NCBI GenBank assembly: GCA_051294905.1
Contig: CM119378.1
Coordinates: 12,524,001-12,588,000, forward strand
Length of the DNA: 64,000 nt
From: Botryllus schlosseri
Lineage: Eukaryota
Direction of reading: 5' to 3'
The notes under the pieces were generated by a model, which was not told the origin of the DNA, ran no database searches, and was given only the letters and a program-made list of their open reading frames with translations. Shown here piece by piece: positions 1 through 47,200 of this stretch (positions are counted from its first letter, which is position 1; each line of letters opens with the position of its first letter). A program made the translations under genes and the position numbers.

Positions 1-323
1 TTTTGTAATTGATGGCGATTCCATACAGATAAGCAATAATGTCATTATAATTTATATGAAGCAATATTCAGATCTACGCGCGTTCAGTGGTCTGACCCAT
101 GAAACACTTTCGATTTCAACCTTTTCTATTTACAATTTGCCGACTAGACAGCTCGCGTGGGATCAGTATCTAGCTTATTGGTCATTTTTAGGAAAATCAG
201 CCCAGGCGATGGTGTCATCTTCATGTAGGTACAATGTAAATAACCTATTACATTTTGCTACAGGTACTTATCAAGAAGTCACGGTTACTGCTTCTACACC
301 AAAGATAAAGGAACAAACATCAG
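1..323 (+). CDS. Possible upstream (ectodomain) exon(s) of the membrane-protein gene at 2109-8791
   Basis: The frame is open from the window start (FVIDGDSIQISNNVIIIYMKQYSDL...) through ORF 56-337. A candidate exon 264-323 (TYQEVTVTASTPKIKEQTS) has tttgctacag/gtcagt boundaries, phase 1-1. No recognisable domain. Confidence 0.3.
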
Positions 324-1044
324 GTCAGTTTCTATAAGGAAATCTCGTCGTTCTGGATAATATGGTATGCAACCACGGGTGAGCCCCTTCACAGTCATGT
401 GAGACTCATATAAGGGGGTGTGGACATTGTCAGTGAACTATAACTATAGATACATGTTCTTGGGTACGGAAAGATTTATATTTTGTTGAAAGTAGCATAT
501 CGATTGGAAATACGTCAGTTGCCACGTTGTACTTGAATTACGTATTTTAACCTAAATTAACTGCAGCTGCAGACTACCATAGTGAAGAACGATATGTGAT
601 GACTGATATGTATTCGCGATTTACCTAAATGAGCGGATATATGACGTACATCCGCGTGTCTACAAAGAAAGAGAACAACTTTCGAGATTATCAGTGATAT
701 TTCGATCATATGCAATGCGTGGTAATCTATCACAATGTAACTAACGATGTATTGAATCAAGACCGTTTGTTGTGTCATCTTCAAATGATGGATTGTGACC
801 ACCGAGACAATCTCGTGGGTGTTAAATAATCCAGTCACTTTATGCACCCTTTAAATTGCAAGCATAGAGTGCATATTAGATCAAACCCGAGATAGGGCCA
901 TGTATATCTATAATTTGATTACCACTAAGAGCTACACCCGTACCATCAATGGAAAGATATTTGTAAATCGCAGCGGTTGTGTAATTTTGGTTGATTCAAC
1001 TATATAAGGGAAATCGCCGCGTTCGAAGAACTGCCATTCTAGTA

Positions 1045-1917
1045 CAGGGGTGTCAAACTCAACTTGCGTCGCGGGCAGGATTCAAACCTTCCGAGTACTC
1101 GCGGGCCGGACCAGTCAAATGATTCCAAAATGTTACTTGAAAATCCCTGACCGTGTTTGTCACGTGAATACTCAACAGTTTGAAGCTTATATGCGAAATA
1201 ATAAGTATGTATGGTATGTCACGGACCATATGGTTCTATTCTATCAACACCTTTATTCGTAAACAATGGATTTGACAAAATTACGATGATTGGCCAGTTG
1301 AATAGTTTGATAAACTGATAAAACAGCTACTTTACTGACGATATGCGTTGGGGCATAATGATATGATTGCTTTTTTTTCGTCGTAATCTGTCACCTGTGT
1401 AGGCCTATGCATTGTGAGAGATACAAGCGATTTAACCGTGAACGCAGACGTTGAACTTTGATTCAATATTATGGTATCGCAATTTGGGTTTCTCTGAAGG
1501 CCGAGGAGCTGTTGACTCATGAGCGAACAAGGAATGCGACCACAGCAGATATTTAAATTATATTTTTGAGTCATAATTATGTTCTCCATGTATGTATAGA
1601 CCGGTATCTGACTGACGTTTTCACTTCACTTCTTTGAACTCACTGTGCACTTATTTTGCCTTCTCTGAATTTGGCATCAATTGCTGCGACTTGCTCCTAA
1701 TGGTGACTAGAGTGATACCACAACATCGCTTTCGGGTGGTTATAATGTAGCCTATATGAACACACTCGACATCTTCTGTCTTCAGGGATTGTTTAATGAA
1801 AGTATTTCGTACTAAAAATCTCAACATTTGTTAGTAATGTGTTGGATAATACAGGCATTTTTCAAAATCGCATCGCGGGCCGGATGCGGCCCGCGGACCG
1901 TGTGTTTGACACCCCTG
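1045..1917. mobile_element. Non-autonomous hAT (Buster/Charlie-type) element, 873 bp
   Basis: TIRs CAGGGGTGTCAAAC / GTTTGACACCCCTG, subterminal GCGGGCCG/CGGCCCGC motifs, exact 8-bp TSD TTCTAGTA (1037-1044 and 1918-1925). Confidence 0.93.
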
Positions 1918-2108
1918 TTCTAGTAGATCTAGAAGTTATGATTTGGAATTATATGGATGTATACAAATCTAAACCACCCTATAATCCTTCATGAGTGTCG
2001 ATCTTTTGGCATATATATTCGAATCCGTTACCGATACCGTTAAAATAGCCATCTGTGTATGGTCTTACGATCCAGGTATAGAATTAACAGCGCCGTTTTG
2101 CATTCTAG

Positions 2109-5100
2109 TCTCTTTCTACGATGAAGGATCTCCATCTACAGCCAACGATACTACACTCTTATTGGGACGCACATCAGAAACACCGAATATCTGGTACATA
2201 TCCATACTTTGCTGCTTATGGTTCTTTCGTCATTAAATATTTACTTGGGTCCATGAAAAACCACGCCAAAAACTCGGAGCCAAGTAGTAAAGCGTGAGAA
2301 TCGATGATGACGAAGTTATCCAAATTCATGGCTAGCGGTAGAGACGACGGTGCCGCATTACACATACCTATTCACGAACCAAAGTATTGTTACGTGTTGG
2401 CTATCTATTAATAGAGTCTCTGCGTAATAGATCCTTGCGTTGTCAGTTTTCGTGCATATATAACGATAACGCATTTGGAAATTTCAGGTATCCATACGTG
2501 ATAGCGGCCGCCATCGTGATACTTTTTATCGTTTCCGTGACTCTCTTCGTTATCAAAAGAAAGAAACAAAAATCGCGAAATCCCAACGAAAACCAGTCCG
2601 CACCGATTGCTTATTACGGGAATTTCGAAGAAGAAGGAATACAACGCGTAAGGAATTCCTAGACATCCGCTTATATTTTGTAAAATGGAAATGCATAAGG
2701 GTCAATTAGAAAAATAGGAACGACATCCTTACCAGAAATACATTGTGTGTGAATTCAGCAACAGCCTGTCAGAGTTTACCCGTAAAACTTGTTCTCGGTA
2801 ATATCAAGTGTCAAGACACCATCATTTCATTATGACGCTGTAATTTAAGATGGGCAATAAGAATGAGCATGTTGGTGAATTGAAGACCTACATTTCATCC
2901 CCTATTTCAGAGAGGTGTTGGACCCCACCTGACACACATAGGTCAATCTGCAATTACAAACATGCATTGAGTAAAATTATAAACCACAACTATAGTGCGG
3001 CGGTGATGACGTAACACGATCCGGTCCTGGTGCGGCCTGACTATATGTGTCAACATTTTCCTGGGCGGCATCAACAATTCAACGTCATGACAGACTTTAG
3101 AGTTAGACGGTATGCTGCAGCCGATATTTCTGCGCTTGACTTGCATCATGGTCGCAGAGTCGAGGTGTAATCGTAATAGCACTCCCACCGGAATGAATCA
3201 GGTTTTCTGTCAGATATTCAGATCCGAGAGTTGGCCTGTGATATAGTATTCCAAGAATATAATTGTCATGAATAATAATCTAGTCTAGATTAAATAGTAT
3301 AAAATTGTGTACTCGATGAGATGATGATTGTGCACTGTGAAGTAGAAGTACACTCACCCAATCATTGCGGCCCGGAGTCCTGATTAATACATAAACCGCA
3401 TCTCCAGCAGCACTTTCACAATGCATTTAGGCATATGGTTAAGAATCAATAATCATTAATCAATAATCGTCAGATTATATTTTCATCTGAACAAGACACA
3501 CACAATGTAAAATGCGATGAGACACAATGCGATGTAATGAACAGATAGGAGAATGCCGAACGACCAGTTGCGGTTGCAGTTGCGGTCTCTTAGAATGGTA
3601 TACCCAATGTCACAGTTCCTTTGTCCATGTTAGTTTTTATTCTGCGGCTCTTTTATCGGGTATTTTTATGTGTTTTTTTGTCGCCATAAGAACAGCGAGC
3701 TGGAAAGAGGAACCCGGAAGAACCTCCGACGCGGAATCGAACCCGTACCTACTAGGTGTACTTCCATGTCATGTGGTCGTCCGTGCACCACCTCGCGTAT
3801 TTAGGTTAATCAAGAGCGGGGTAGGGAGGGCGATTAACATTTGAGTCGATACCAATTTCGTAATATGGTCAGGGTCACGTCCAATATATTACCAAACATT
3901 TTTTACCTCGTCAGGCAAGAGAAAACACGTATACGGAGATCCCATATTTCACCAAGTCTTCAACTGATTATGAACGACCTTCTTGTTCAGGTATGTAGTA
4001 GGCTTCATCACAGGAGATGAATACATGAACTGATCCTTACTTTCTAGATACAAAACTACAATAATGTCGCATTTCCAGGTACACGTACATCGGATGAAAG
4101 TGGTGCCGAATCTTCAAACACCTACAGTAATGTTTACGGAAATTTTTCAGAGGGGCAAATGGACGAATGTAAGAATTTCTTTTCATTTCAAGCGTTATGT
4201 GTCATAATTTATCTAATTCACATCTCGTGAACCATTGCAATGTACATATACCAGGGATTCTCAATATTTTTTTCTGTGGTCCACCTCTTATCCTATAAAG
4301 CTATAGTCATGTTTGATGAGTGGTGATGGCATGCTGGGACCGATATGATCATTTCTCTAAAATATGCGCATTTTCTCCTACTAATCATATTTAATCTAGA
4401 CCTCTAGGGAGATGAAATTGCTCCAATCGCGACGGAAATTTTCAAGTTCAATGAATCCCCTCCAACAAACAACCAACAAAATAATTTTGGGCCCCTTCGA
4501 GATCCCCTCAATTGGGGGCTTGGGGTGCGGCGGTTACGGTCCTGGTAGATCGTATGTAACTCTTGTGTGCATTATGGCCGCCCGCTGTTCCACTTACGTA
4601 GCGACATCCAATGATGTGATCCCCGCATCCACCGTGCGATTGGGGTTTTAGTTCCACTACGGTGGGGAATAATAATACCATTCTGGGCCAGCTTCAAACA
4701 ATTCTTCGGTGAATGGGATACTTATAATACAGAGAAGTGGAGAACGAATGTTTTAATAAGCAAGCTGTACACGTGCAGTGTACACTGTACAATGTAGGCT
4801 ACGCAGTATGTCTTGTACCTACTGAAGTTTCGATGTCAGAACATAATCCAATGATACAATCAATTCATGTGACTCTTACATTATGTACCTACAATGATTT
4901 CAAGGCTGGGCTATCTTGAACGGATGAGAATGATAGAACCACTGATTACGATATACCGGAGGTATAAACAGTTTTGAATATTGCGATTTTCAGATATAGC
5001 TTCGAATACCTTTCCAAGTACATACGAACCAGCAACCGACCCCGTCACAAGCATTGCGGAGGGCTCTACAGTTAATACTACATACGAAATTCCCACGGAA

Positions 5101-8100
5101 CTAGAACAAGTGCCTCGAACAATATCGACAGGTAGCCTGTAACTACGGTTTTATGTCTAGTTTAGTATCATAGAAATCTAGCGCTATACTCTGGTTTAAG
5201 ATCCGGAAGATCAGAACATAGAAGAAGCTAACAAGAATAGCACTCAAGAAAATTATGACTACGACGTGTACAGAGGGCCAGTGGAAATGCCGGAACTAAC
5301 CGACCAAACAAACGCCGAATACAAGACAATATCTCAGAAAGCTGAACGCTTATCAAATCGCCCGCCTTTGATTAAAAACATATCATCTTTAGGTAATGAC
5401 GCAATCCGCCAAGGTTACAAAATTCGGTGAATATGGACGTCACGCCCTAGCATGTTGAAGCTGACATAACCTCATCACAACCGTGTCTCTCACATCCAGC
5501 TAAGCTATTGCCTCTATTTTCAGATTCAGCGATTGAAGATGATGCACCTTCTCCGATGATATGCATCAGTCCCAAGCTCATTGATAATGTATTTGATTAC
5601 AATGCAAGTGCGTTTTCGCCGCCAACGGATATTAAAATACTGACATCAATAGTCCCTTTCAAATTAGGGTTGCATTTAAAACAAATGGTTGTTTAGGACA
5701 TTTTGTTTGAAACATGTTTTAAATCATGTTTTAAACAAAGGCCTTTTAAAAAAAGTATGTGTTTTTCAAGATGTATAAATATGCCATAGTAATTGTGTAA
5801 ATACTTTCCAAAAAACATGTTGTATGAGCCTACGGATGACTACCATCCTATATACCCGACGTATACGATATGGGACGATATGGAAACCTCAAAATAATCG
5901 GTTCAACAGGTATAGTACTTGTACATTTCGTCAAAGGAGCTATATTTACCCTATATTTTCAATTGTGAATGTCAATCCACTATGACGTCACAATTTAATA
6001 TTCGTGACGTCATGGCTTAAAAAACATGTTTTAAACAAGGGTCTTGTTTCAAACAGGTTTGTTTTAAATTGATTTTTATTTTAACTGCAACCCCATTTCA
6101 AGGTGTTGACGGTTTATACGCGTCATTGATTCCCGGGCCTCCAGAGATGGCCTAAATCGGGGGTCGGCGATCCTGGGCACGCGTGCCATTTGTGGCACGC
6201 CAGATGATTTTTCATATACCAAATGATTTTACGCAAACGAAATATTATAACCATTTTTTAGCAAAAAGTGAATCAGAAGGTTTTAAAATGCACAAAGCTC
6301 GTAGGCGACTCAATCTTATTTCGTAAATCAATATAAAATAGAGTCTTTGGGGGCCTATTTTATTTATCTAGAATTTCCGCGATTCGTGCAATTTAGTGGA
6401 ACCTGATTTCTTGGTTATAATGTGGGAACCCCCAGAAATTATATGCGTAATGTACAGAAATAAGTCCAACCTCATTGGTAATTATGAACTTAATATCGCA
6501 TGAAACCGTTTGGATGCTTTAGTGTAGTAGCGTGCACTATGCGAATATTATATGAATCGGCATTTCGGGGCTGGTCTGGTCATTTTCACGCTATACAAGA
6601 CACGACCTTCTGGCAACATGCGACCATGCTACTCCGTGCGGTGTCTACGCTTGCAAAATGATTCGGGGCGATAAAACCTTGAGATATAATAACGGCCGCA
6701 TGTTGGCCAAAACGCTCGACAATGAAACGTCCACTGTCCGAAATGACCAGCGCCGAATACTCCAGCGCTCGCAGCTTGAGCCTTCCGTATCAAATAAGAC
6801 CCGCCGAGGAAAACAGTGAGCCCCTGCGTTGAAATGAGAATTTGGGATCGCGCTCGTCTCACGAAAGGAGATATTCTTTAGTTTCGTCTGGTACGTGTAA
6901 GCGAAATTTGGAGCGACGGCCTGGGGTTACATTTAAAACAAAAATCAATTTAAAACAAACATGTTTAAAACTAGGCCGTAATATATAACGTGTTTTTTAT
7001 TGTTTTGTTTTTGTTTTTCAATTGTGACGTCATAGTCGAGTGGCATTGACAATTGAAAATATAGGGTAAACATAGCTCCTTTGACGAAATATATGTACTA
7101 TTAATGTTGAACTATAGATAACTAACCTACGGATAGATACCCAACACCCGTCGTCACGCTTGCTTGCTCGGAGGAAAATACTGCTCAGCAATCTGAACTC
7201 AACGTAATTGCCAATCCCACAGCTGACGAACCGAGCGCTCAAATTAAATAAAGTTTATCTTATTAGAAAGCTACTGTCGCACTGATTCCGAAAATATACA
7301 TTAAACTTTCATCAAGGCAAAAGAACCAGCCCGAAATAGCGTTCAAAGTCTGAAAATCGGCATTGTTCCAGACAATCGCATCGACGCACCACAATGACCA
7401 TAACAATAACCCTTGCGTGTCTTCGATTGTTCAGAACAATGCCAATTTTCAGACTTTGAGGTGTATTTCGAGGCGGTTCCATTGCCCCGATCGGATTTTA
7501 ATGTATATTTTCGGAATCAGTGCGACAGTAGCGTTCAAATATGATCAACTTTAATCAATTTGAGCGCTCGGGTCGTCAGCTATGGGATTGGCAATTACGT
7601 TGCGTTCAGATTGCTGAGCGGTATTTTCCTCCGAGCAAGCAAGCGTGACGACCGTTGTTGGGTATCTATCCGTAGGTTAGTTATCAATAGTTGAACCGAC
7701 TATTTTGAGGGTTCCAACCATCCCATATCGATATAGCCTACGTCGGCTATATCGGGTGGTAATTGTCCGTAGGCTCATACAACATGTTTTTTGGAAAGTA
7801 TTTGCTCAATTATGGCATAATTTTACAACTTGAAAATTTTTTTTTAAAGGCCTTTGTTTAAACAATGTTTAAAACATGTTTTAAACAAAGTGTTTTAAAA
7901 CACCGTTTGTTTTAAATGCAACCCTACCTTTACCGCTTTACCGCGACCTATATGGCTGACAAATCCAGTGTCCGACCAACCTGAATATCACATCAAACCG
8001 ACTTGTATGACACACTGATACTGGATGGGCACATTTTTCAGCATTAGGCCATATCATCATAACAACATCGATTTACATGCCACCGATTAGACATGGTAGC

Positions 8101-8791
8101 GAACACAGTTGGCTTGGAAACGAACAAAGCAACCACAGAAGATCGATCTATCGCGACTAAAAATAAATGATGAAAATATTACGGACATTTAAGCGATATG
8201 TCTATTGTGATAGCGACCAATAATTTAAGAATCACTGGCGTGACCGATACCGCTGACAGCTGCAGATAAGCGGTTGGTGTGATACCTTGCTTGAAATACT
8301 TAATATGACAAAATTAAAAATGTTTGACACTCTAATTGGTATTAATTTTGCATTTTTGAACATTTTGGCACGCTGCATACAAAAGATTGCCGACCCCTGG
8401 CCTAAGTTCATGCAGTATTGATATTCCTTCCCATTATCTATGGGAGATTTGCATTCAAAAGCCTTTGTCTACCTCTATAGAAAGCCAAGAAAACGCATAC
8501 GCCATGCCAACTTCTCCAGTGTTCCCACTGGACGTACGCAGTAAAAGTGAAAAGGATCTTCAGACCGACAGCGGCTATATCAGCAGAGAAGCCAGCCTCG
8601 AACGACCGAACGAATATTGCGCCATGGACGATATTCCAGGGACGAGTAAAAATCCAGAGAAAACTGTGACCTTATCGAGAACATACACAACGATGCATCG
8701 GGTAAATGCCCCGTTATCCCGAAAAGAAATGAGAAGGCAGTATAAAACACAAGGGGGCAAACGAAGAAACGCCCGTAGATTAGATGAATGA
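2109..8791 (+). CDS. Type-I single-pass membrane protein with long Tyr-rich, low-complexity cytoplasmic tail (3' part of gene)
   Basis: Candidate exons 2109-2193 and 2488-2647 (TM YPYVIAAAIVILFIVSVTLFVI followed by basic KRKKQK). Then 4048-4168, 4994-5131, 5201-5392, 5524-5607, optional 7969-8004, and 8481-8791 (stop). All have AG/GT ends. Phases chain as 1-2, 2-0, 0-1, then 1-1 to the stop. More exons may lie between 2648 and 4047. Confidence 0.7.
3690..3797 (-). mobile_element. tRNA-derived SINE-like head (degenerate)
   Basis: Minus strand shows A-box-like AGGTGGTGCACGG and B-box GGTTCGATTCC at tRNA-like spacing, but I could not fold a full cloverleaf. Similar B-box remnants near 18840 and 36860. 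Confidence 0.45.
5665..7926. mobile_element. Foldback-type element with ~430-bp inverted arms, TA-flanked, in an intron
   Basis: Left arm 5665-6094 is the reverse complement of right arm 6923-7926 once the 7113-7689 insert is removed. Ends TAGGGTTGCATTTAAAACAAA / TTTGTTTTAAATGCAACCCTA. Each arm also ends internally in a TIR-like copy (TGCAACCCC, GGGGTTACA). Confidence 0.8.
7113..7689. mobile_element. Long-TIR (Mutator-like) MITE nested in the foldback arm
   Basis: ~140-bp inverted arms (7113-7255 vs 7548-7689) around a ~290-bp core. GTTGAAC, single in the left foldback arm, is duplicated at 7106-7112 and 7690-7696. Confidence 0.75.
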
Positions 8792-9521
8792 TTGCATTTT
8801 TGTTGTAACGCAGACCTATACATCAAATGCATTTTGGTTGTTTGCTCTCCTCGAACGTGGAGTATTTTCCGGTTATATTGACAGTTATATTTTCCAGTTA
8901 TACTGCCAAATGTCGAGCGGAAAGATAAGTTCCAGCAGGCCTAACGCACTATTGCAATAAATTCTTATTCTAGCCATCCTATATTATTTGTCGTCAAACA
9001 AAAGATCGACTTTTATAGAAACAATCAATTCAGATCTTGTCTAGTTTGAGATTCCGAGATGCAACATTTAGGATTCAAAATCAAGATTCAATGTTTTGTT
9101 GGAAGTCGGAAATCGGTAACATTTGTCAACCTGGCATGAACTGAACTGAACAAACACTCGTGATCATTTGACCGATTGACGTCATAGTCTACATTTAACT
9201 CTCTGAGACCCGACCCACTCGTATGAGTGGGTGATTGTCTTCCCGAAATATCCGCACCCACTCATATGAGTGGGCGATGGCCACATCACGATATGCCAGA
9301 TATGCCGGATTTCGGTATTTGTCTAAACGCAGGTATAGGCATTCTAATGTGACGGAAATCACTGACTATCGCATGCAAGACAACATGATGCAGTGCTTAA
9401 TCTGAAAGGCCGTAAAATCGTCAACGCAAGATCCTGTATTGCATATTATCTAATTTGCGTCGATTCAGGGAGTACTTTGATTTTCAACTTTCACTTTGGA
9501 GCGTGGGACAGCTTAACAACC

Positions 9522-10679
9522 ATGGCTAACAGCACTGACATGGAATATTTGGGCTATAATTATGATAATAATTCGGAAAGCGATGCTGTCGCCAATGGTG
9601 TTACTGTGGAGTCAGAAAACGCGGGAAATGAAGACAGCAGTTCCAGAGCGTATCTTTACTTTTTCCAAGCGATCAACATCGTAATGATTATTGCGATTAT
9701 GTGGGTACTTGCGAATATGATCATTTTCGGTAAAAGGACCCGGAAATGGAGATCGTCCACGGACAAAACAAAGGTCGACAGCGGAAATATATTCATGGTA
9801 TGCATAGTGGCGGTAGGCGCTACCATGCCGAGGCTAGTTTTCAGTCAGCTGCTCTTCCACGAAGAATTATTCCATTACTGTGAAGTCATAATGGACCTTG
9901 GCATCGCTGCGTATTCAATATCATTGTGGTTGGTGTACTTTTTCTTGTGGCTTCGCCACAGAGCCATATACGCACACCCAACGGTGAAACAAGTCATGGG
10001 GAAATACTCGAACTGTATCAGCTGGTTTTTACTGTCGGTTGTCACGGCTGCGTCGGTGGCCGTGACGGTTGGATTTGTGTATCCGGTCGAATTCACCAGT
10101 GAGAAGGATGGCTGTGTTTTACGCAAGAAAACGGTGAACAATACAGACTCTTTGACTTTCTGGGATCTAAACGCTTATTACATCCTCGGCGGGTTCCTAT
10201 TTGTTTCCCAGTTCAATTTCTTGCTGCTGTTCATATATCCTATGATCATCACGAGGAAAATCAGAAAAGAACAGCGAACGCCGGAATGCAACCACAATCA
10301 TAACGCCCACCCAAGGCGACATTTGGGGCGTATTGTTGCGGGATCGTGCGCACGGGTTTTCAAGAAAAGAGAAATAGACAGCATATCCGCGATTATCTAC
10401 CGCTCCATCGTGAGTTCTACCATCGCGGTCTCGACAGACTTGATTGTGGCCTTTCTCGTGGCTCTGGTGGTTCCGGGCACTGTTTCGAGGGCTATTACTG
10501 TGTCGCTATACGACATGAGCCTAGTCATCAACGTTCTTTGTATGCTGGCGACTTTTGGAAGCAACAGCAAAATTTTATTCACCGTCTGCAGACAAACAAT
10601 GTCTCGTTCGTCATCATCGAGCAGTTTGAATTCATTTCCAAAGTCTAACAATAGAACCGCAAGCACTGAGATGGTCTGA
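9522..10679 (+). CDS. Intronless orphan 7TM (GPCR-like) receptor, 385 aa
   Basis: First ATG in good context (ACAACCATGG) inside ORF 9393-10679. N-terminal N-glycosylation sequons (NST, NNS) and seven hydrophobic segments. Cys at top of TM3 (HYCEV) and in ECL2 (DGCVL). VYFFLWLRHRAIY at the DRY-equivalent position; Ser-rich C-tail. Confidence 0.88.
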   Translation: MANSTDMEYLGYNYDNNSESDAVANGVTVESENAGNEDSSSRAYLYFFQAINIVMIIAIMWVLANMIIFGKRTRKWRSSTDKTKVDSGNIFMVCIVAVGATMPRLVFSQLLFHEELFHYCEVIMDLGIAAYSISLWLVYFFLWLRHRAIYAHPTVKQVMGKYSNCISWFLLSVVTAASVAVTVGFVYPVEFTSEKDGCVLRKKTVNNTDSLTFWDLNAYYILGGFLFVSQFNFLLLFIYPMIITRKIRKEQRTPECNHNHNAHPRRHLGRIVAGSCARVFKKREIDSISAIIYRSIVSSTIAVSTDLIVAFLVALVVPGTVSRAITVSLYDMSLVINVLCMLATFGSNSKILFTVCRQTMSRSSSSSSLNSFPKSNNRTASTEMV

Positions 10680-11986
10680 CATTCTGGAACCTACGCCGTT
10701 GGATTGTATCCAATGCCCCGTTCGACTGTGGATTGACAGAAATCTCAAACGCCTTATTCCTCTGTGGCACTGAGACTACAATGTGGGTGCGGTGATGGCC
10801 TGACTTGCGCATTTGATGCATTTAAATTTATCTGTGTGCTGATCGACTTGGGATTGACAGAACGCTGAAATGCGTTATCGCCCTGTATCACCGTGACCGT
10901 GGCCGTGGGGATTGCCGTGCCGATTTTGGCTTCAATCGCTCGTATGTAAACGAGCGAAGCTGGTACCTTATCGCGTATAATGATTTGATATTTTGTATTA
11001 AATTTGTGAGGTAATATAAATTCATGTCGTATGTGTTTTTGCTGATCGATTGTTGTCTTGAATATCTCGGGCTGGGGCAGATTAGGAAGTGGTTGGCGCG
11101 AAGTTACAAGTCCCGCGAGACTGAGTGGTGTAACCAGGGCAAAGCGGAAATAACAACGAGAGATCGTTTCTCCGCATCCGCAATGTGCTCTTTGTAGGCA
11201 GACTGGGCATTTTAATTTTTTTACGCGTTACTCGCCATGCCACACAATTGATGGGTTTCTTTGTATCACAAATCCAAAAACAAACAACAGGGCAATAAAT
11301 CCCGCATATAGGATGGCTCCGTTTACAAGCCTCACACTCCAGACTAGTGGTTCACAGTGACGTTGTCATTAAGGGGTCCTTGAGCTTGAAATATTCCGTC
11401 GAAGAGTTCGTGACTAGTAAGTGGCCACTGATTGAACGCATATCTCTCAACACGAAAATGTATGATGGAAAAATTTCAGAGACTCCAAATTCACTCAATC
11501 AATGACTTTTTTATAATGAATCATGTTTCATAGAACTGTGAAGCGTACGTTTGGTTTTCTGCACCCTGTTTTTTCACACATGCCTGTACGAACGGAGCAT
11601 ACATGCATTAGAAATGGGTTTCCTGCTGCTAATAAAACTGAGATTTGATCGCGCTCTAAAAAGTTTGAGAGCCACTGGCCTTGGACATGTAAATAAGAGG
11701 CATGTAAATGTTCATTGGACAAAGAGTAACACAATACAACACAAAAAAGGACAAGCAGTGAAAAAGAAATGACTTGTGTCGGCAGGCGAAATCGATATGG
11801 GAGATCGTGATCCGAAAAGCTCAAGCTCAGACTATAGTTGCTATTATTTCCATATATTCATTTCCCATACGCACAAGGGCATAAACCACGATAGGCGCGA
11901 CTTCCGATCCAACATCAATAATAATACGAGTGACGTTTATAAGCGTTTACGCTTTGGTTATTTCGATGAAAAGCTATAGTAATCAG

Positions 11987-12564
11987 TAGGGAAGGTTTTT
12001 GTTGCAAATAAATCCGTGGAAAGTTGCATTCATTTTCCACATAAGTTGCACTAAAAAGTTGAAGTTATGGACGAGTTCCTTGAAATTATTAGGGCATGAG
12101 ATGCTCGAAACGATCCGTATCCAAGGCATTGTAGCAAAACTCAGTGTTGGCGACTTCAACAAAATCAATAACCTGAAAAACCTGACCCAGTGAAAATACA
12201 ATTTTCGGTGGTCTAGCCTGAAGGTAAGTAAAATCAGGAATGACCTCAAATTTAAACGACAAAGAAATAATCAATCGATCTATTTACATATAATGCCAAA
12301 TATTTCCAGTAAAGAGTTAGTTGAGTGAAAAATTGAAGAAACTTTCAAAATGTTTCATGAAAGATCGAAAAAGTTGCAAAAAGATGCATGAAAAATCGAT
12401 AAAGTTGGAAAAAGTTGCATGAAAAATTGGAGAAAAGTTGCAACAAGCTGCTATATAAAATTCCTCCAAACAGCATATGACAGCATACTACATAGCTTCT
12501 GGGTATTTAGGAAGCTGCCAGAAGCTGTAAAAAGAAGTTGCAAAAGTTGCAAAAACTTGCCCTA
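11987..12564. mobile_element. hAT MITE, 578 bp, with internal AAAGTTGCA repeats
   Basis: TIRs TAGGGAAGGTTTTTG / CAAAAACTTGCCCTA (2 mismatches); exact TSD GTAATCAG (11979-11986 and 12565-12572). Confidence 0.85.
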
Positions 12565-19448: not shown

Positions 19449-21162
19449 GGAGAGAGAGAGAGAGAGAGAGAGTCTTTATTTTCATCGAACCAAAATACAT
19501 AACAAACGGCAGTGATGGTGGTACAGAAAATATGCATGCACAGTATTCGGTATTAGATAGGAATGATCGATAAGACCGTGAAGGTCATCTAGTCTGATCA
19601 CACCAGCATCAAACAGGTACACTTGACTCAGAACAGTCTGGCTGTGAAAAAATGTTTAGTTAGGAAAGGAAAATATAATAAAAAATTAAACAATGGTAGC
19701 AAATGATCAATGAAGCAATGTCTGGGCGAGGTAGGGCAACAGTGTTAGTGTGACGACAAGAGGCGATCAAGTAGGGCTTTTTTGAATCTATTATAAGGCA
19801 ATTCACGGATATGTGATGGTAATGCATTCCAGATGATAGGTCCCGAGTAGTCGATAGATCTCTTAGTTAGGTTGCTATTGGGTTGGGGTAAGTAGACGTT
19901 TCCTTTAGACGAAGATCTCGTGTAATGGGAATGGACATCTTTAGCAGGTATGAAAAAGTCATCAAACACAGGAGGGAGACTATTGGAAAAGTATTTGTGA
20001 ACAACTTTTGATACTTCGAAGCGATACAGTTCATCAACTCGCAAAATTCGATGCTTACGGTAGTAAGGCGATAAATTGGTACGTAAAGGTACAGATGAGA
20101 TCAGCCGTATCGCACGGTTTTGCAGGGTTCGAATTCTGCACAAAAATGTTGTACAGGCATTTCCCCATACTACGATTCCATATTGCAGATGCGAGTGGAA
20201 AAGAGAGAAGTAGATGGTTCGTAGTACTGATCTGGAAACCAAAGATTGGAGACGGGTCATTATTCCCACACACCGAGCTAGTTTTGATATTGTGCATTCA
20301 ATATGCTGCTTCCAAGACAATTTGGAATCAATGGTGACGCCGAGATATTTTGCTGAGTCACATATTGAGATTTGTTTATGATTGATGTTCACAGTGAAAT
20401 TATGACTGGCATTTAAAACGAGCATCTCGGTTTTATCTGCATTCAAACTTAGTTTGTTTGCTTGCAGCCATCTCGACACTTTTGGGAGTTCCCTATTCAC
20501 AGATGCATGCAAATCATCGACAGTGTTGGAGGTTATGAAGAGGTGAGTATCATCAGCAAATAGCGTTGTGCGGAATAAAGATGCATTAACAATGTCGTTA
20601 ATATAAATGAGGAAAAAAGTCGGTCCAAGGACTGAGCCTTGTGGCACTCCACAAGTTATATCTCTGGTAGTCGTTCTTAATGTCCCAAGTTTAACAAATT
20701 GCTTGCGGTTTGCCAGGTAGCTTTCAAGTAGAGTTGCTGCAATACCCCTGATTCCATAGTGTTTTAGCTTGTATCTTAAGATTCTGTGGTTAACTGTGTC
20801 GAAAGCTTTGCGGAGATCGATAAAAATGCTGCAGCCACTTTCTTTTTGCTTGATGGTTTTGTAATAGTCCGTTACAATTGATAGTATTGCATGGTTGGTG
20901 TTGTGGTTGGATCTGAATCCATGCTGGGTCGGAGACAGTACTGCATTCAATTCAAAAAAGTTCTTAAGTCGGCAGTCAATCAGTTTCTCAAAAACCGTGG
21001 CAAGATTTGGCAAAACAGATATTGGTCGGTAGTTAGAAATTAGCTTTTTACAGCCTTTCTTAAACACTGGCATTACTCTGGCAGTTTTCAGTGCATCTGG
21101 GAAAATGCCTAGACGTATCGACTCATTAAAGAAAATGCATATAACATCACCAATAATATAAT
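19449..21162 (-). mobile_element. 5'-truncated L2/CR1-group LINE with intact RT ORF
   Basis: ORF 21175-19745 carries RT motifs NYRPISVL, QHGFR, FIDLRKAFDTV, GVPQGSVLGP and LFADDT. The 3' end is AATAAAGAC(TC)n at 19480-19449. No clear TSD. Confidence 0.95.
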
Positions 21163-21238
21163 GAATAATGTACATGATATAGACCGCGCTAACGTAGATG
21201 ATATTATGTCACGTTTTGATCGCGGGGAGCATATAATC

Positions 21239-44282: not shown

Positions 44283-47200
44283 TCAAAATCCCTCCAATCT
44301 CAAAACCCAAATCCAATCGTTCGGTATCTGTTTCGGCGGCAGGCTGTCCAATTGCACAGAAATTCCGGTCGTTTTCAACAGGTTCCATTTCAGAGGCGTC
44401 GTAGTGCCCACCATCGTAACGTTGGCGGCATTGGAAATCGGCTGGGCTGATCCGAGCACCAGTGACCCCGATTGCGGCCAATCGAAAAAGAAGGCGTAGA
44501 TATTCTTCGCTTTTGCGGTATACCTGGAAAAGAGCAGCGGAATATTCCTGATTAGTGCACAGCAAAGTGAGACCTCTAGAACAAAAGCCTATAAATTCTT
44601 ATAGAACATACTTTGATCATGAATAGGGTAGACCGTGTCTTAAAAATGCACCACTAGCTTCCACCAGAAATTTCAGCGACGTAGCCTAATTAGTTGATGT
44701 GCAACTCTCAGGAGGTACTTCATCACACAACAAATTAAAATATCCGATATCATATCATATATATCTAATAACACCTGATAAAACTATTTAATGATCTGGT
44801 TACATCCAACTGAATACTCTAAATATGGCTCGAATCGCATCAGCATCAGTCATAATATTAGCCGTCATTATTGAGGGATGCATAAATTTAAACAATACTT
44901 TGGCTGATTTTGTAGCATTGCTCTCACTCTTGCAGAGAGTGTTGAAGGACAGATTCAAGCTAATGGATCGCAATATGCATAATGTCGTGACCACACTATT
45001 GTATTTTCATAACGGACTATTGCTTTATTAAAGTAAAGGTAACCAATGTATGTGGCTTTCGGCAACATTAAACAGCAACCGACAGCACGGAAAAGAAAAG
45101 AATGGCATGGCAATGATAAGGCAACAGCGCGCTTATTGCTAAATTACAGATCGCCACACATAACCTCACGACAGTTGCATAAAAAGAATCAAGTACGGCT
45201 GAATCACAAAAAATACAACGTATGACAGTGGTTCTCAACCTTTTTCACCTCGCGGACCGGTAAAATTTCCAAAAATAGTCGGCGGACCGGCGGGTCTTCG
45301 AAAACTGAAATCAACCCAAAATATAATTACGAAAAGGATCACTTTTTCCCAAATTGGGCAATATATTCTCCTATTTCAGATTTATATACCTTCCGAAGAC
45401 TAGAACAAGGTCCCTTGGGCCGTGAAAACGAGTAATGATGCTGGCTCAGGCCTACATAACCGGTAGCACCATCATGACATCGCAGTTTGTGGTCTGCTAT
45501 GACCCGATATGCCTAACTTTTTCAGAGAAAATCAATATCTCCCTGATTTTTTAACCGCTGATCCTCAAGAAGGCATCAGAGAGTCAGGATATATCAGTGA
45601 GGAGGCGTGGTACACAGCAGGTCGCCAACTTCATTCCTACCAAAAATTAACCAAATATCGAAAACAAATGTATATATTTGTATGGGTAATGACATGATTG
45701 CACCCCACCACCCCCTCATAAAGCACAACACAGCACAGAAATAGTGCTTTGGCATATTCTGTCATCTACCGGCACCGGCATACTAAACCTCACAATACCT
45801 TGCATTCCACGCCTGAGATGTAAAATCACTGAAATATGACGAAACTTCCGACTGAACATTAGGAAGCACAAAGCCTAATTTGATTATGAAATGGCGATAA
45901 ATCTCCGAAAGTAACACAAGGTGCTTTGCTAACGACACAAGTACAGACGACCTTTCCTACACGTAGGAAATAACTTGAAACTATACGTGCACGGTGTTTT
46001 CAAATTATCATGATAATTTCAGTTACAAACATCAATACGGTTGTAATTGAATGTGGTGCCCAATTCAAAGAATCAATGCAAGTCATCAATGACGACAACA
46101 TGAGGAGGAATCATCATCTTCTGGAGTTTATCTTTATGCCGTAGCCTGCAGTGCCGTAGCCATCCCTTCCAAATGGAGAATGTAAACTTCAAGTTAATGA
46201 GCAATTTGTTCCTGTCTCTTCGATATTATTCGTGTTATACGTGGTTCAATTGAAGTTTCTGCTAGGCGAAGTACAGCAGCGACATCCACACGATTTCTCT
46301 GTTTGGTCATGATGAGGGATAATGATGAAAAGCTTTTTTCGGATAGGTATGTTGTGCAAAAAGTCAGCAGTAATTTCATAGCTTTATCACTGAGCTCGGG
46401 ATATTCATTTTTCAGTGATATCCAAAACTGTGACAACGGCTCGTCTTTACACTTAGACATCAGGGTTGCATCACAGGAAAGCTCAATTAGCGATTCTTTC
46501 TCAATATTGTTAAGATTACACTCATTAATGTCGGTTGTAAAAGGATTAACAATCCAGTGATTTCCCTTTCGCGGGTCAACACTTTCTGGAAAATCTTTGT
46601 CAAAACTGACCTGTACCTGCTCTAAGTGTTGACGTATGATAGCAAATAACTCCTGTGTGTCTACAGAAGCATTGGAAACGGCGTCTTCCAAAGAGGGAAA
46701 CATATCAATATCATCTTTCTCAACATTGCTCTTCTAAAACATCAGTTTGCGTTTGAGGGAGGCATCGGTTTTGTTACGCAGCGTAAATATGTTGGTGTGA
46801 TTTCCTTGCAACGACTTATTCAGGTCATTCATGCGGCTGAATATGTCTGCTAAATACGCAAGCTTTGCGATCCACATCTCATCTGATAGGAGTTCTTTTA
46901 GTGGAGAATTTCCCTCCAACAGAAACTGCTTGACTTCCTCCCTCAACTCAAATAGTCGAGTGAGAACACGTCCTCTCGAGAGCCACCTTACTTCTGCATG
47001 AAGTAAAAGATGTTGATGTTGCGCTCCCAGGCTATCACACAAAGCCTCAAAAAGCCTTGAATGCAATGCTCGGCCACGTATATAATTTATAATTCTCTCT
47101 GCTACGTTCAGAACTTCGGTCAATTCAGTAGACATTTTTTTGGCACATAAATTTTCCCTGTGAAGAATGCAATGTGTAACGAGCAGATCCGTGTTTGCCA

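What the first reader, a model, noticed from the sequence alone, without database searches (positions are those of the whole stretch)
2109..8791. Unrecognised transmembrane 'docking' receptor: ~300-aa tail packed with SH2-binding tyrosine motifs and no catalytic domain
Seen: a TM helix with a basic stop-transfer, then a phase-consistent exon chain encoding a disordered tail with at least 13 Tyr sites. These include four YxN (YYGNF, NYNNV, TYSNV, VYGNF), three YxxP (YEIP, YRGP, YAMP) and two C-terminal YxxM (YCAM, YTTM). Established: pYxN binds the Grb2 SH2, pYxxP binds Crk/Nck, and pYxxM binds PI3K p85; this mix typifies Gab/IRS/Dok/LAT-type scaffolds. Inference: a lineage-specific receptor that carries its own scaffold, possibly immune or allorecognition-related, next to orphan 7TM receptors. 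This is the best candidate in the window for an undescribed signalling system.
Basis: partly seen in the sequence, partly recalled or inferred. Interest (0 to 1): 0.8.

Follow-up and report, generated by a model that had tools for sequence, protein, structure and literature searches.

The report
Orphan membrane protein with tyrosine-rich tail
This is a real, spliced and transcribed gene for a single-pass membrane protein with a long, floppy, tyrosine-rich inner tail that probably recruits signalling proteins, but it has almost no known relatives and its sensing outer part lies outside the window.

Summary
The gene is real. Transcriptome contigs from three runs join the exons at six GT..AG introns. 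The spliced frame gives a stalk, one membrane helix, a KRKKQKSR stop-transfer and a 327-residue tail ending at the TGA at 8789-8791.

The tail has 20 tyrosines (6.1%). That is more than the average protein (P about 0.002) and far more than typical disordered sequence. The motif classes are not enriched beyond this composition: YxN 3 (P 0.17), YxxP 4 (P 0.05), YxxM 2 (P 0.06).

No Pfam, PDB, Atlas or metagenome relative exists. The only homologue among 1.8 billion representatives is an 86-residue fragment, 54% identical over the last 56 residues. It keeps both YxxM sites but not the third tyrosine.

RNA alleles carry a Tyr-to-Cys change in the YDYDVY cluster.

A phosphotyrosine docking role is plausible but unproven. 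The immune or allorecognition idea has no support here. The ectodomain lies upstream of the window, so family assignment stays open. Unchecked notes from this scan list several similar tyrosine-tail genes on other DNA of this genome.

The parts
2..224 (+). Probable ectodomain exon, cut by the window start (74 codons, unknown domain)
   Evidence: - The frame is open from the window edge.
- The donor 224|GTAGGT is in phase 1, matching exon 264-323.
- X3 contig 12 carries 535 nt upstream of 3915, which equals 160+85+60+230.
- P(no stop in 74 codons) is 0.02.
- Not directly laid with reads.
- No Pfam, PDB or Atlas match.
- The single-sequence model is poor (pLDDT 64.5, mixed strand and helix). Its fold matches are not significant.
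264..323 (+). Stalk exon (TYQEVTVTASTPKIKEQTS), phase 1-1
   Evidence: AG/GT sites and phase are consistent. X1 contig 3 (1349 nt) has exactly 145 nt (85+60) upstream of the TM exon. This is inferred, not directly laid.
2109..2193 (+). Ser/Thr-rich stalk exon with one N-glycosylation sequon (NDT)
   Evidence: AG/GT sites are present. The exon ends in phase 2 and joins 2488 to give Trp. The stalk is 33% Ser+Thr. Inferred from phase and contig length arithmetic.
2488..2647 (+). Transmembrane exon: helix, KRKKQKSR stop-transfer and first YGNF site
   Evidence: Translation. The joint 2647>3915 is seen in X1 and X3 contigs. Pfam gives only sub-threshold TM-helix matches (EphA2_TM E 0.011, SIT E 0.062).
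3915..3990 (+). Tail exon 2 (YTEIP, YF, YERP)
   Evidence: Joints 2647>3915 and 3990>4079 are seen in RNA contigs.
4048..4078 (+).
   Evidence: The transcripts use the acceptor at 4079 (joint 3987>4076 with cut +3). A start at 4048 after exon 3915-3990 gives a stop (own phase check).
4079..4168 (+). Tail exon 3 (YSNVYGNF)
   Evidence: Joints 3990>4079 and 4168>4994.
4994..5131 (+). Tail exon 4 (YIAS, YEPA, YEIP)
   Evidence: Joints 4168>4994 and 5131>5201.
5201..5392 (+). Tail exon 5 (YDYDVYRGP, YKTI), polymorphic
   Evidence: Joints in X1, X2 and X3. A5261G in all three RNA runs changes the middle Tyr to Cys. A5280T is silent.
5524..5607 (+). Tail exon 6 (FDYNA)
   Evidence: Joints 5392>5524 and 5607>8481 are in contigs. 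Four raw reads of X17 also show the 5607>8481 joint.
5665..7926 (.). Nested inverted-repeat transposons filling the last intron
   Evidence: Inverted repeats I1-I5, including 283-nt arms at 7106-7388 and 7414-7696. Word depth in RNA contigs runs from hundreds to thousands, so this is a high-copy repeat.
8481..8791 (+). Last coding exon: YAMP, DSGYIS, tandem YxxM (EYCAMD, RTYTTMH), basic C-terminus and stop
   Evidence: - RNA joint 5607>8481.
- 54% identity to P0001 over the last 56 aa.
- Predicted disordered except for a helix at residues 80-90.
8792..8961 (+). 3' UTR with AATAAA at 8956-8961
   Evidence: X1 contig 3 has 345 nt beyond 8599, reaching about 8944.

Best explanation
Window 1-8961 (+ strand) holds the 3' two thirds or more of a transcribed gene for a type I single-pass membrane protein.

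Its layout, from outside the cell inward:
- an extracellular domain of unknown type, cut by the window start;
- a Ser/Thr-rich, probably glycosylated stalk;
- one membrane helix;
- a basic stop-transfer;
- a 327-residue, acidic, intrinsically disordered cytoplasmic tail with 20 tyrosines and a basic C-terminal helix.

Shown: the exon chain, the frame, transcription, the lack of any known domain in the pieces scanned, disorder of the last exon, and conservation of the C-terminal block in one related organism.

Inferred: the tail works as a string of short linear motifs. When the ectodomain is engaged or clustered, cytoplasmic tyrosine kinases (Src, Abl or Syk type) phosphorylate the tyrosines. 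The phosphotyrosines then recruit SH2 proteins.

The best-supported single element is the conserved tandem YxxM pair, 23 residues apart, which is the kind of site that binds the two SH2 domains of PI3K p85. YxN (Grb2/GADS-type) and YxxP (Crk/Abl-type) sites are possible further docks.

By design it is a kinase-less scaffolding receptor like DCBLD1/2. It is not a demonstrable member of any known family.
For: - Six GT..AG joints in RNA contigs of three runs, plus raw reads at the last joint.
- An open spliced frame of 397 codons ending in a stop, with AG/GT at every exon.
- A 22-residue hydrophobic helix followed by KRKKQKSR, which by the positive-inside rule puts the tail in the cytoplasm.
- Tyr is 6.1% of the tail: P 0.0016 against 2.9% and 1e-5 against 2%.
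- A hydrophobic residue at +3 in 7 of 20 tyrosines, against 3.2 expected (P 0.03).
- The two YxxM sites keep Y and M in the only homologue, while +1/+2 vary (YCAM/YCTM, YTTM/YVTM).
- The last exon is predicted disordered.
- No enzymatic domain in any piece scanned.
- Ascidians express Src, Syk, Grb2, GADS, Crk and PI3K (PMC12582321), so readers for such motifs exist.
Against: - No phosphorylation or binding data exist.
- YxN, YxxP and YxxM counts are what the composition gives (P 0.17, 0.05, 0.06).
- One Tyr is Leu in the homologue.
- The middle Tyr of YDYDVY is Cys in the expressed alleles of three runs.
- Conservation in the one alignment is a 54% identical block, not tyrosine-specific, so 2 of 3 Tyr kept is no better than background.
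- Expression is low (word depth 5-11) and the tissue is unknown.
- The ectodomain, signal peptide and start codon were not seen.
Confidence: 0.5

Rival explanations
1. The tyrosines act mainly as YxxPhi sorting signals, read unphosphorylated by clathrin adaptors. On this view the protein is an adhesion, mucin-like or cargo receptor whose tail controls endocytosis and trafficking rather than SH2 signalling.
For: - Seven of 20 tyrosines fit Y-x-x-[LIVMF], against 3.2 expected (P 0.03).
- The stalk is Ser/Thr-rich with an N-glycosylation sequon.
- The SH2-class motifs are not enriched.
Against: - One or two sorting signals are enough for trafficking, so 20 tyrosines in an acidic disordered tail is more than trafficking needs.
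- Y-x-x-hydrophobic is also the general SH2 preference, so this signal does not discriminate.
- The conserved pair is specifically YxxM.
Confidence: 0.17
2. It is a diverged tunicate orthologue of a known receptor family (a DCBLD, CDCP1 or neuropilin-like scaffold receptor, or another type I receptor). The diagnostic ectodomain would lie upstream of the window, and only the fast-evolving tail is visible here.
For: - The gene runs off the window start.
- DCBLD tails are only about 40% identical between mammals and fish while keeping YxxP sites (PMC6029619), so tail homology would be invisible at this distance.
- There are four YxxP sites here.
Against: - The 74 membrane-proximal ectodomain codons give no Pfam hit even at E 10 (no discoidin, CUB, FN3, Ig or EGF) and no PDB hit.
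- The 122 visible extracellular residues hold a single Cys.
- No full-length relative of the last exon turned up among 1.84 billion representatives.
Confidence: 0.15
3. It is a young, fast-evolving orphan membrane protein. Its tyrosine richness is compositional and has no specific docking role, and the motifs are chance products.
For: - The motif classes are not above shuffles.
- There is a Tyr-to-Cys polymorphism, and about 5% allelic divergence in the last exon (X3 records 16 and 17).
- There is almost no detectable homologue.
- Expression is low.
Against: - Tyr at 6.1% is unusual for disordered sequence.
- The nine-exon frame is intact and spliced.
- The C-terminal block is 54% identical in another organism, which argues for constraint.
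Confidence: 0.13
4. The tail is released by regulated intramembrane cleavage and goes to the nucleus, directed by the C-terminal bipartite basic cluster.
For: RKEMRRQYKTQGGKRR fits the bipartite NLS pattern. It sits in the conserved, helix-forming part of the tail.
Against: This is a pattern match only. Basic C-termini next to membranes more often bind acidic lipids. No cleavage motif or DNA-binding part is visible.
Confidence: 0.03

Closest known systems
DCBLD1/DCBLD2 (ESDN) scaffolding receptors
   Same: They are type I single-pass proteins with no kinase domain and a long disordered tail. In them, conserved tyrosine motifs (7-8 YxxP) are phosphorylated by Src-family and Abl kinases and recruit CRK/CRKL SH2 domains (PMC6029619). 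The tail here has four YxxP sites, including YAMP.
   Different: No sequence similarity was found. The visible membrane-proximal ectodomain shows no discoidin domain. YxxP sites here are at the chance level (P 0.05). The conserved sites here are YxxM, not YxxP.
LAT and the other transmembrane adaptor proteins (NTAL, PAG, LIME, SIT, TRIM)
   Same: They have a membrane anchor and a disordered multi-tyrosine tail with YxN Grb2/GADS sites and no enzymatic domain. Ascidians are reported to lack LAT and SLP-76 homologues (PMC12582321).
   Different: The ectodomain here is at least 48 aa, probably more than 122 aa, rather than a few residues. There is no juxtamembrane CxxC palmitoylation motif; the first tail Cys is at position 55. 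The Pfam SIT match (E 0.062, 14 bits against a cutoff of 27.6) covers only the helix.
Botryllus fester co-receptors (FcoR)
   Same: They are tunicate type I membrane proteins whose tails carry tyrosine motifs of partly unknown function, including core-1 YxxI/L/V (PMC12582321). Three core-1 matches occur here.
   Different: There is no ITIM, hemITAM or paired core-2 ([A/D]VYxxV) motif here. An IgSF ectodomain was not seen. There is no gene pair or cluster of paralogues in the window. The FcoR tails are described there only as longer than 60 aa, so tail length could not be compared.
Tandem-YxxM co-receptors (CD19, CD28/ICOS type)
   Same: They carry C-terminal YxxM sites that, once phosphorylated, bind PI3K p85 SH2 domains (established knowledge, not tested here). 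The pair here, 23 residues apart, is the only tyrosine element shown to be conserved.
   Different: There is no homology and no Ig ectodomain evidence. There are many more tyrosines here, plus a basic C-terminal helix.
MEGF10/PEAR1/Draper engulfment receptors
   Same: They are single-pass proteins with tyrosine-rich, kinase-less tails.
   Different: Those have EGF repeats next to the membrane and NPxY motifs (my own knowledge, not checked here). Here the visible 122 extracellular residues have one Cys, and there is no NPxY.

Membership tests
Transmembrane adaptor proteins (LAT/NTAL/PAG/LIME) | Very short extracellular part (a few to about 20 residues) | tested here: not met
   At least 48 extracellular residues come from two phase-consistent exons, plus a 74-codon open exon reaching the window edge. 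The RNA contig lengths agree.
Transmembrane adaptor proteins (LAT/NTAL/PAG/LIME) | Juxtamembrane CxxC palmitoylation motif | tested here: not met
   There is no CxxC in the tail. Cys occurs only at tail positions 55, 210 and 271.
Transmembrane adaptor proteins (LAT/NTAL/PAG/LIME) | Several tyrosine motifs including YxN, with no enzymatic domain | tested here: met
   The tail has 20 Tyr and three YxN sites. No Pfam domain was found in the pieces scanned.
Transmembrane adaptor proteins (SIT, Pfam PF15330) | Sequence match above the Pfam gathering score | tested here: not met
   The score is 14.3 bits against a cutoff of 27.6 (E 0.062), over the helix only.
DCBLD1/2 | CUB-LCCL-discoidin ectodomain | tested here: inconclusive
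   Most of the ectodomain is outside the window. The visible membrane-proximal 74 aa give no discoidin or other Pfam hit at E up to 10.
DCBLD1/2 | Seven to eight conserved intracellular YxxP motifs | tested here: inconclusive
   There are four YxxP sites (shuffle P 0.05). Their conservation could not be tested, because no homologue covers them.
ITIM/ITAM/hemITAM immunoreceptors and Botryllus FcoR | ITIM, ITAM, hemITAM or paired core-2 motif in the tail | tested here: not met
   Regular-expression scans found none. Only three core-1 YxxI/L/V sites occur, at the chance level.
ITIM/ITAM/hemITAM immunoreceptors and Botryllus FcoR | Immunoglobulin-superfamily ectodomain | not testable with these tools
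   The ectodomain lies upstream of the window start. The single read-laying run was used on 2600-8599.
MEGF10/PEAR1/Draper | EGF repeats next to the membrane and NPxY in the tail | tested here: not met
   There is one Cys in the 122 visible extracellular residues and no NPxY.
PI3K-recruiting receptors (functional class, not a homology family) | Conserved YxxM sites | tested here: met
   YCAM and YTTM align with YCTM and YVTM in P0001. Binding itself was not tested.

The most novel reading that the evidence does not exclude
The protein is a tunicate-specific membrane-anchored signalling hub that does the job of the missing LAT/SLP-76 module. Ascidians are reported to have Syk, Src, Grb2, GADS, Crk, PLC-gamma and PI3K but no LAT or SLP-76 homologue (PMC12582321). 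A surface protein carrying YxN, YxxP and conserved tandem YxxM sites in one tail could be the independently evolved platform that assembles these adaptors downstream of their immune or allorecognition receptors.
Probability: 0.06. Interest if true: 0.75.

Novelty: new member of a known kind. Interest (0 to 1): 0.3.

Why it matters
If the tail is a true phosphotyrosine platform, it would show that kinase-less scaffold receptors arise repeatedly from unrelated sequence. It would also give tunicate immunologists a concrete candidate for the adaptor hub they have not found by homology.

As it stands, the solid result is modest. It is a verified gene model, with one corrected exon boundary, for an orphan membrane protein that sequence databases do not hold. 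It is also a caution that SH2-type motif lists in a tyrosine-rich tail are not evidence in themselves.

Tried and rejected
Searches that found nothing:
- Pfam on five exon translations: nothing except sub-threshold TM-helix matches.
- ESM Atlas on the last exon and on the ectodomain piece: best scores 0.70 and 0.62, below any useful level.
- PDB sequence search on both pieces: zero hits at E 10.
- Exhaustive phmmer of the last exon against 1.84 billion representatives: one true hit (P0001), plus one compositional hit to a repeat protein (P0002, rejected).
- Word-index searches with the ectodomain ORF, exon 5 ORF and P0001: nothing new.
- Exact look-up of the last-exon ORF: not on record.
- The P0001 contig (Logan, 6772 nt) could not be read because the file is too large. 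Its upstream ORFs, which may be the homologous exons, were therefore not compared.
- Two metagenome scans, one with the single sequence and one with the two-sequence alignment: no relative.
- tblastn of the spliced protein against the window: no paralogue.
- Rfam and tandem-repeat scans of 1-12000: nothing relevant.

Analyses that gave no usable result:
- Single-sequence AlphaFold of the 74-aa ectodomain piece gave pLDDT 64.5. Foldseek against AFDB clusters then gave only E above 0.07, which I treat as meaningless.
- A self-alignment of the tail showed no significant internal repeat (score 48 against a shuffle mean of 44.8). Only the short YGNF[ES]E recurrence stands out.

Ideas rejected:
- LAT-family membership, an ITIM/ITAM receptor and a MEGF/Draper type (see the membership tests).
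- The DSGYIS beta-TrCP-like degron is present but not kept in P0001, so I give it no weight.
Full report
**What is there**

Reading the + strand of 1-9600 and translating three frames shows a series of short open stretches flanked by AG and GT. I worked out their phases by hand and then tested them with public RNA data.

Transcriptome contigs of three runs of the same organism (X1, X2, X3), plus raw reads of X17, were laid on 2600-8599. They show six joints, all GT..AG on the + strand:
- 2647>3915
- 3990>4079
- 4168>4994
- 5131>5201
- 5392>5524
- 5607>8481

One X1 contig of 1349 nt carries every tail exon and about 345 nt of 3' UTR.

The spliced sequence reads through in one frame, in this order:
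- a Ser/Thr-rich stalk;
- the helix YPYVIAAAIVILFIVSVTLFVI;
- KRKKQKSR;
- 327 further residues to the TGA at 8789-8791.

An AATAAA lies at 8956-8961.

The transcripts use the acceptor at 4079. With 4048 the frame coming from exon 3915-3990 runs into a stop. The stretch IQNYNNVAFP, and with it the NYNNV motif, is therefore intronic.

**Upstream part**

Two more exons (264-323 and 2109-2193) fit by splice sites and phase. They also fit by arithmetic: the X1 contig has exactly 145 nt (85+60) ahead of the TM exon.

The X3 contig has a further 230 nt. That matches an exon open from the window edge to a phase-correct donor at 224|GTAGGT. A stop-free run of that length has a chance probability of about 0.02.

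The gene clearly continues upstream of the window. The start codon, signal peptide and most of the ectodomain were not seen.

The visible 74-residue ectodomain piece has no Pfam, PDB or Atlas match. Its single-sequence model is poor (pLDDT 64.5) and its fold matches are not significant.

**The tail**

It has 20 Tyr in 327 residues (6.1%). It is rich in Ser, Glu, Thr, Asn and Pro, net acidic (53 D+E against 40 K+R), and has a basic last 40 residues.

The last exon folds to nothing but one short helix (pTM 0.19). The four cytoplasmic pieces scanned, about two thirds of the tail, have no Pfam domain.

Tyrosine density is above the proteome average (P 0.0016 at 2.9%) and far above what is usual for disordered sequence.

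| Motif | Observed | Expected from shuffles | P |
|---|---|---|---|
| YxN | 3 | 1.5 | 0.17 |
| YxxP | 4 | 1.5 | 0.05 |
| YxxM | 2 | 0.4 | 0.06 |

Mild excesses exist for Asn at -2 (5 against 1.5, P 0.01) and for a hydrophobic residue at +3 (7 against 3.2, P 0.03). Neither is corrected for the number of patterns tried.

There is no ITIM, ITAM, hemITAM, NPxY, CxxC or Botryllus core-2 motif. There is no significant internal repeat, although YGNF[ES]E occurs twice.

**Relatives**

An exhaustive phmmer search of the last exon against 1.84 billion cluster representatives found one true relative, P0001. It is an 86-residue ORF on a 6.8-kb Logan contig.

P0001 is 54% identical over the last 56 residues. 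It keeps EYC[AT]MD, KNP.K.VTLSRTY.TMH and KTQG. Both YxxM sites keep Y and M while the residues between them vary. The third tyrosine (RRQY) is Leu.

With one homologue, 2 of 3 tyrosines conserved is no better than the 54% background. All other searches were empty, and the window holds no paralogue.

Within the species, all three RNA runs carry A5261G, which turns the middle Tyr of YDYDVY into Cys. Two last-exon alleles in X3 differ at 6 of 112 positions.

**How it most likely works**

The topology follows from the helix and the positive-inside rule. The tail has every hallmark of a linear-motif platform.

I think the most likely mechanism (about 0.5) is phosphotyrosine docking. Clustering of the ectodomain would let Src, Abl or Syk-type kinases phosphorylate the tail, which then recruits SH2 proteins. 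The conserved tandem YxxM pair, a PI3K p85-type site, is the best-supported element.

All of this is inference from established motif specificities. Nothing here shows phosphorylation.

The rivals are:
- tyrosine-based sorting signals on an adhesion or mucin-like protein;
- a diverged member of a known receptor family whose ectodomain is off-window;
- a fast-evolving orphan whose motifs are chance;
- as a long shot, a cleaved tail with a bipartite nuclear signal.

**Comparison with what is known**

By design it resembles DCBLD1/2, which are kinase-less receptors whose conserved YxxP tyrosines recruit CRKL after Fyn or Abl phosphorylation (PMC6029619).

It differs from LAT-type adaptors in having a real ectodomain and no palmitoylation motif.

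It differs from the Botryllus FcoR proteins in lacking their ITIM, hemITAM and core-2 motifs and their clustered genomic arrangement (PMC12582321).

That paper also states that ascidian genomes lack LAT and SLP-76 homologues while having Grb2, GADS, Crk, PI3K, PLC-gamma, Syk and Src. This makes a convergent membrane hub an attractive but low-probability reading.

**Context from the scan**

Other agents' notes describe this genome as sea-squirt-type. They list several other single-pass genes with tyrosine-bearing tails on other DNA of this genome. These notes are unchecked. They suggest that this gene class is common there rather than singular.

**Verdict**

The gene model is real and, as far as the databases searched here go, undescribed. 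The signalling interpretation is reasonable but rests on composition-level motifs plus one conserved YxxM pair. The immune or allorecognition link is unsupported. Interest is moderate to low until the ectodomain, the orthologues and the phosphorylation state are known.

One caveat concerns strand. The few X17 exon reads all have the first mate on +, which would mean antisense in a dUTP library. The GT..AG orientation of all six introns and the open frame fix the transcript on the + strand.

Noticed in passing
window 5665-7926: The last intron (2873 nt) is mostly nested inverted-repeat transposons, including a 590-nt near-perfect palindrome (283-nt arms at 7106-7388 and 7414-7696, 87% complementary). 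Word depth in RNA contigs runs from hundreds to thousands, so the family is high-copy and present in many transcripts.
   Followed up: partly
window 3458-3575: This is a short element in intron 1 with very high depth in all four RNA runs, on both strands. Nearly all X17 reads match only a core of about 50 nt (3511-3564) and then run on into unrelated sequence. One joint skips 39 nt (3501>3541). It looks like a short repeat unit embedded in many transcripts. There is no Rfam match.
   Followed up: partly
window 1040-1920: An element of about 880 bp with terminal inverted repeats (CAGGGGTGTCAAAC... and its complement near 1900-1917) lies in the intron between exons 264-323 and 2109-2193. It is probably a MITE-like DNA transposon.
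   Followed up: no
window 5261: All three RNA contig sets carry G instead of the reference A, changing Tyr to Cys inside the YDYDVY cluster. The neighbouring A5280T is silent. In run X3 the last exon also shows two alleles differing at 6 of 112 positions.
   Followed up: partly
   Followed up: no
window 19748-21175 (-) and 46197-46703 (-): These are mobile-element ORFs: a reverse transcriptase (RVT_1, E 1e-34) and a hAT transposase dimerisation domain (E 4e-8).
   Followed up: no
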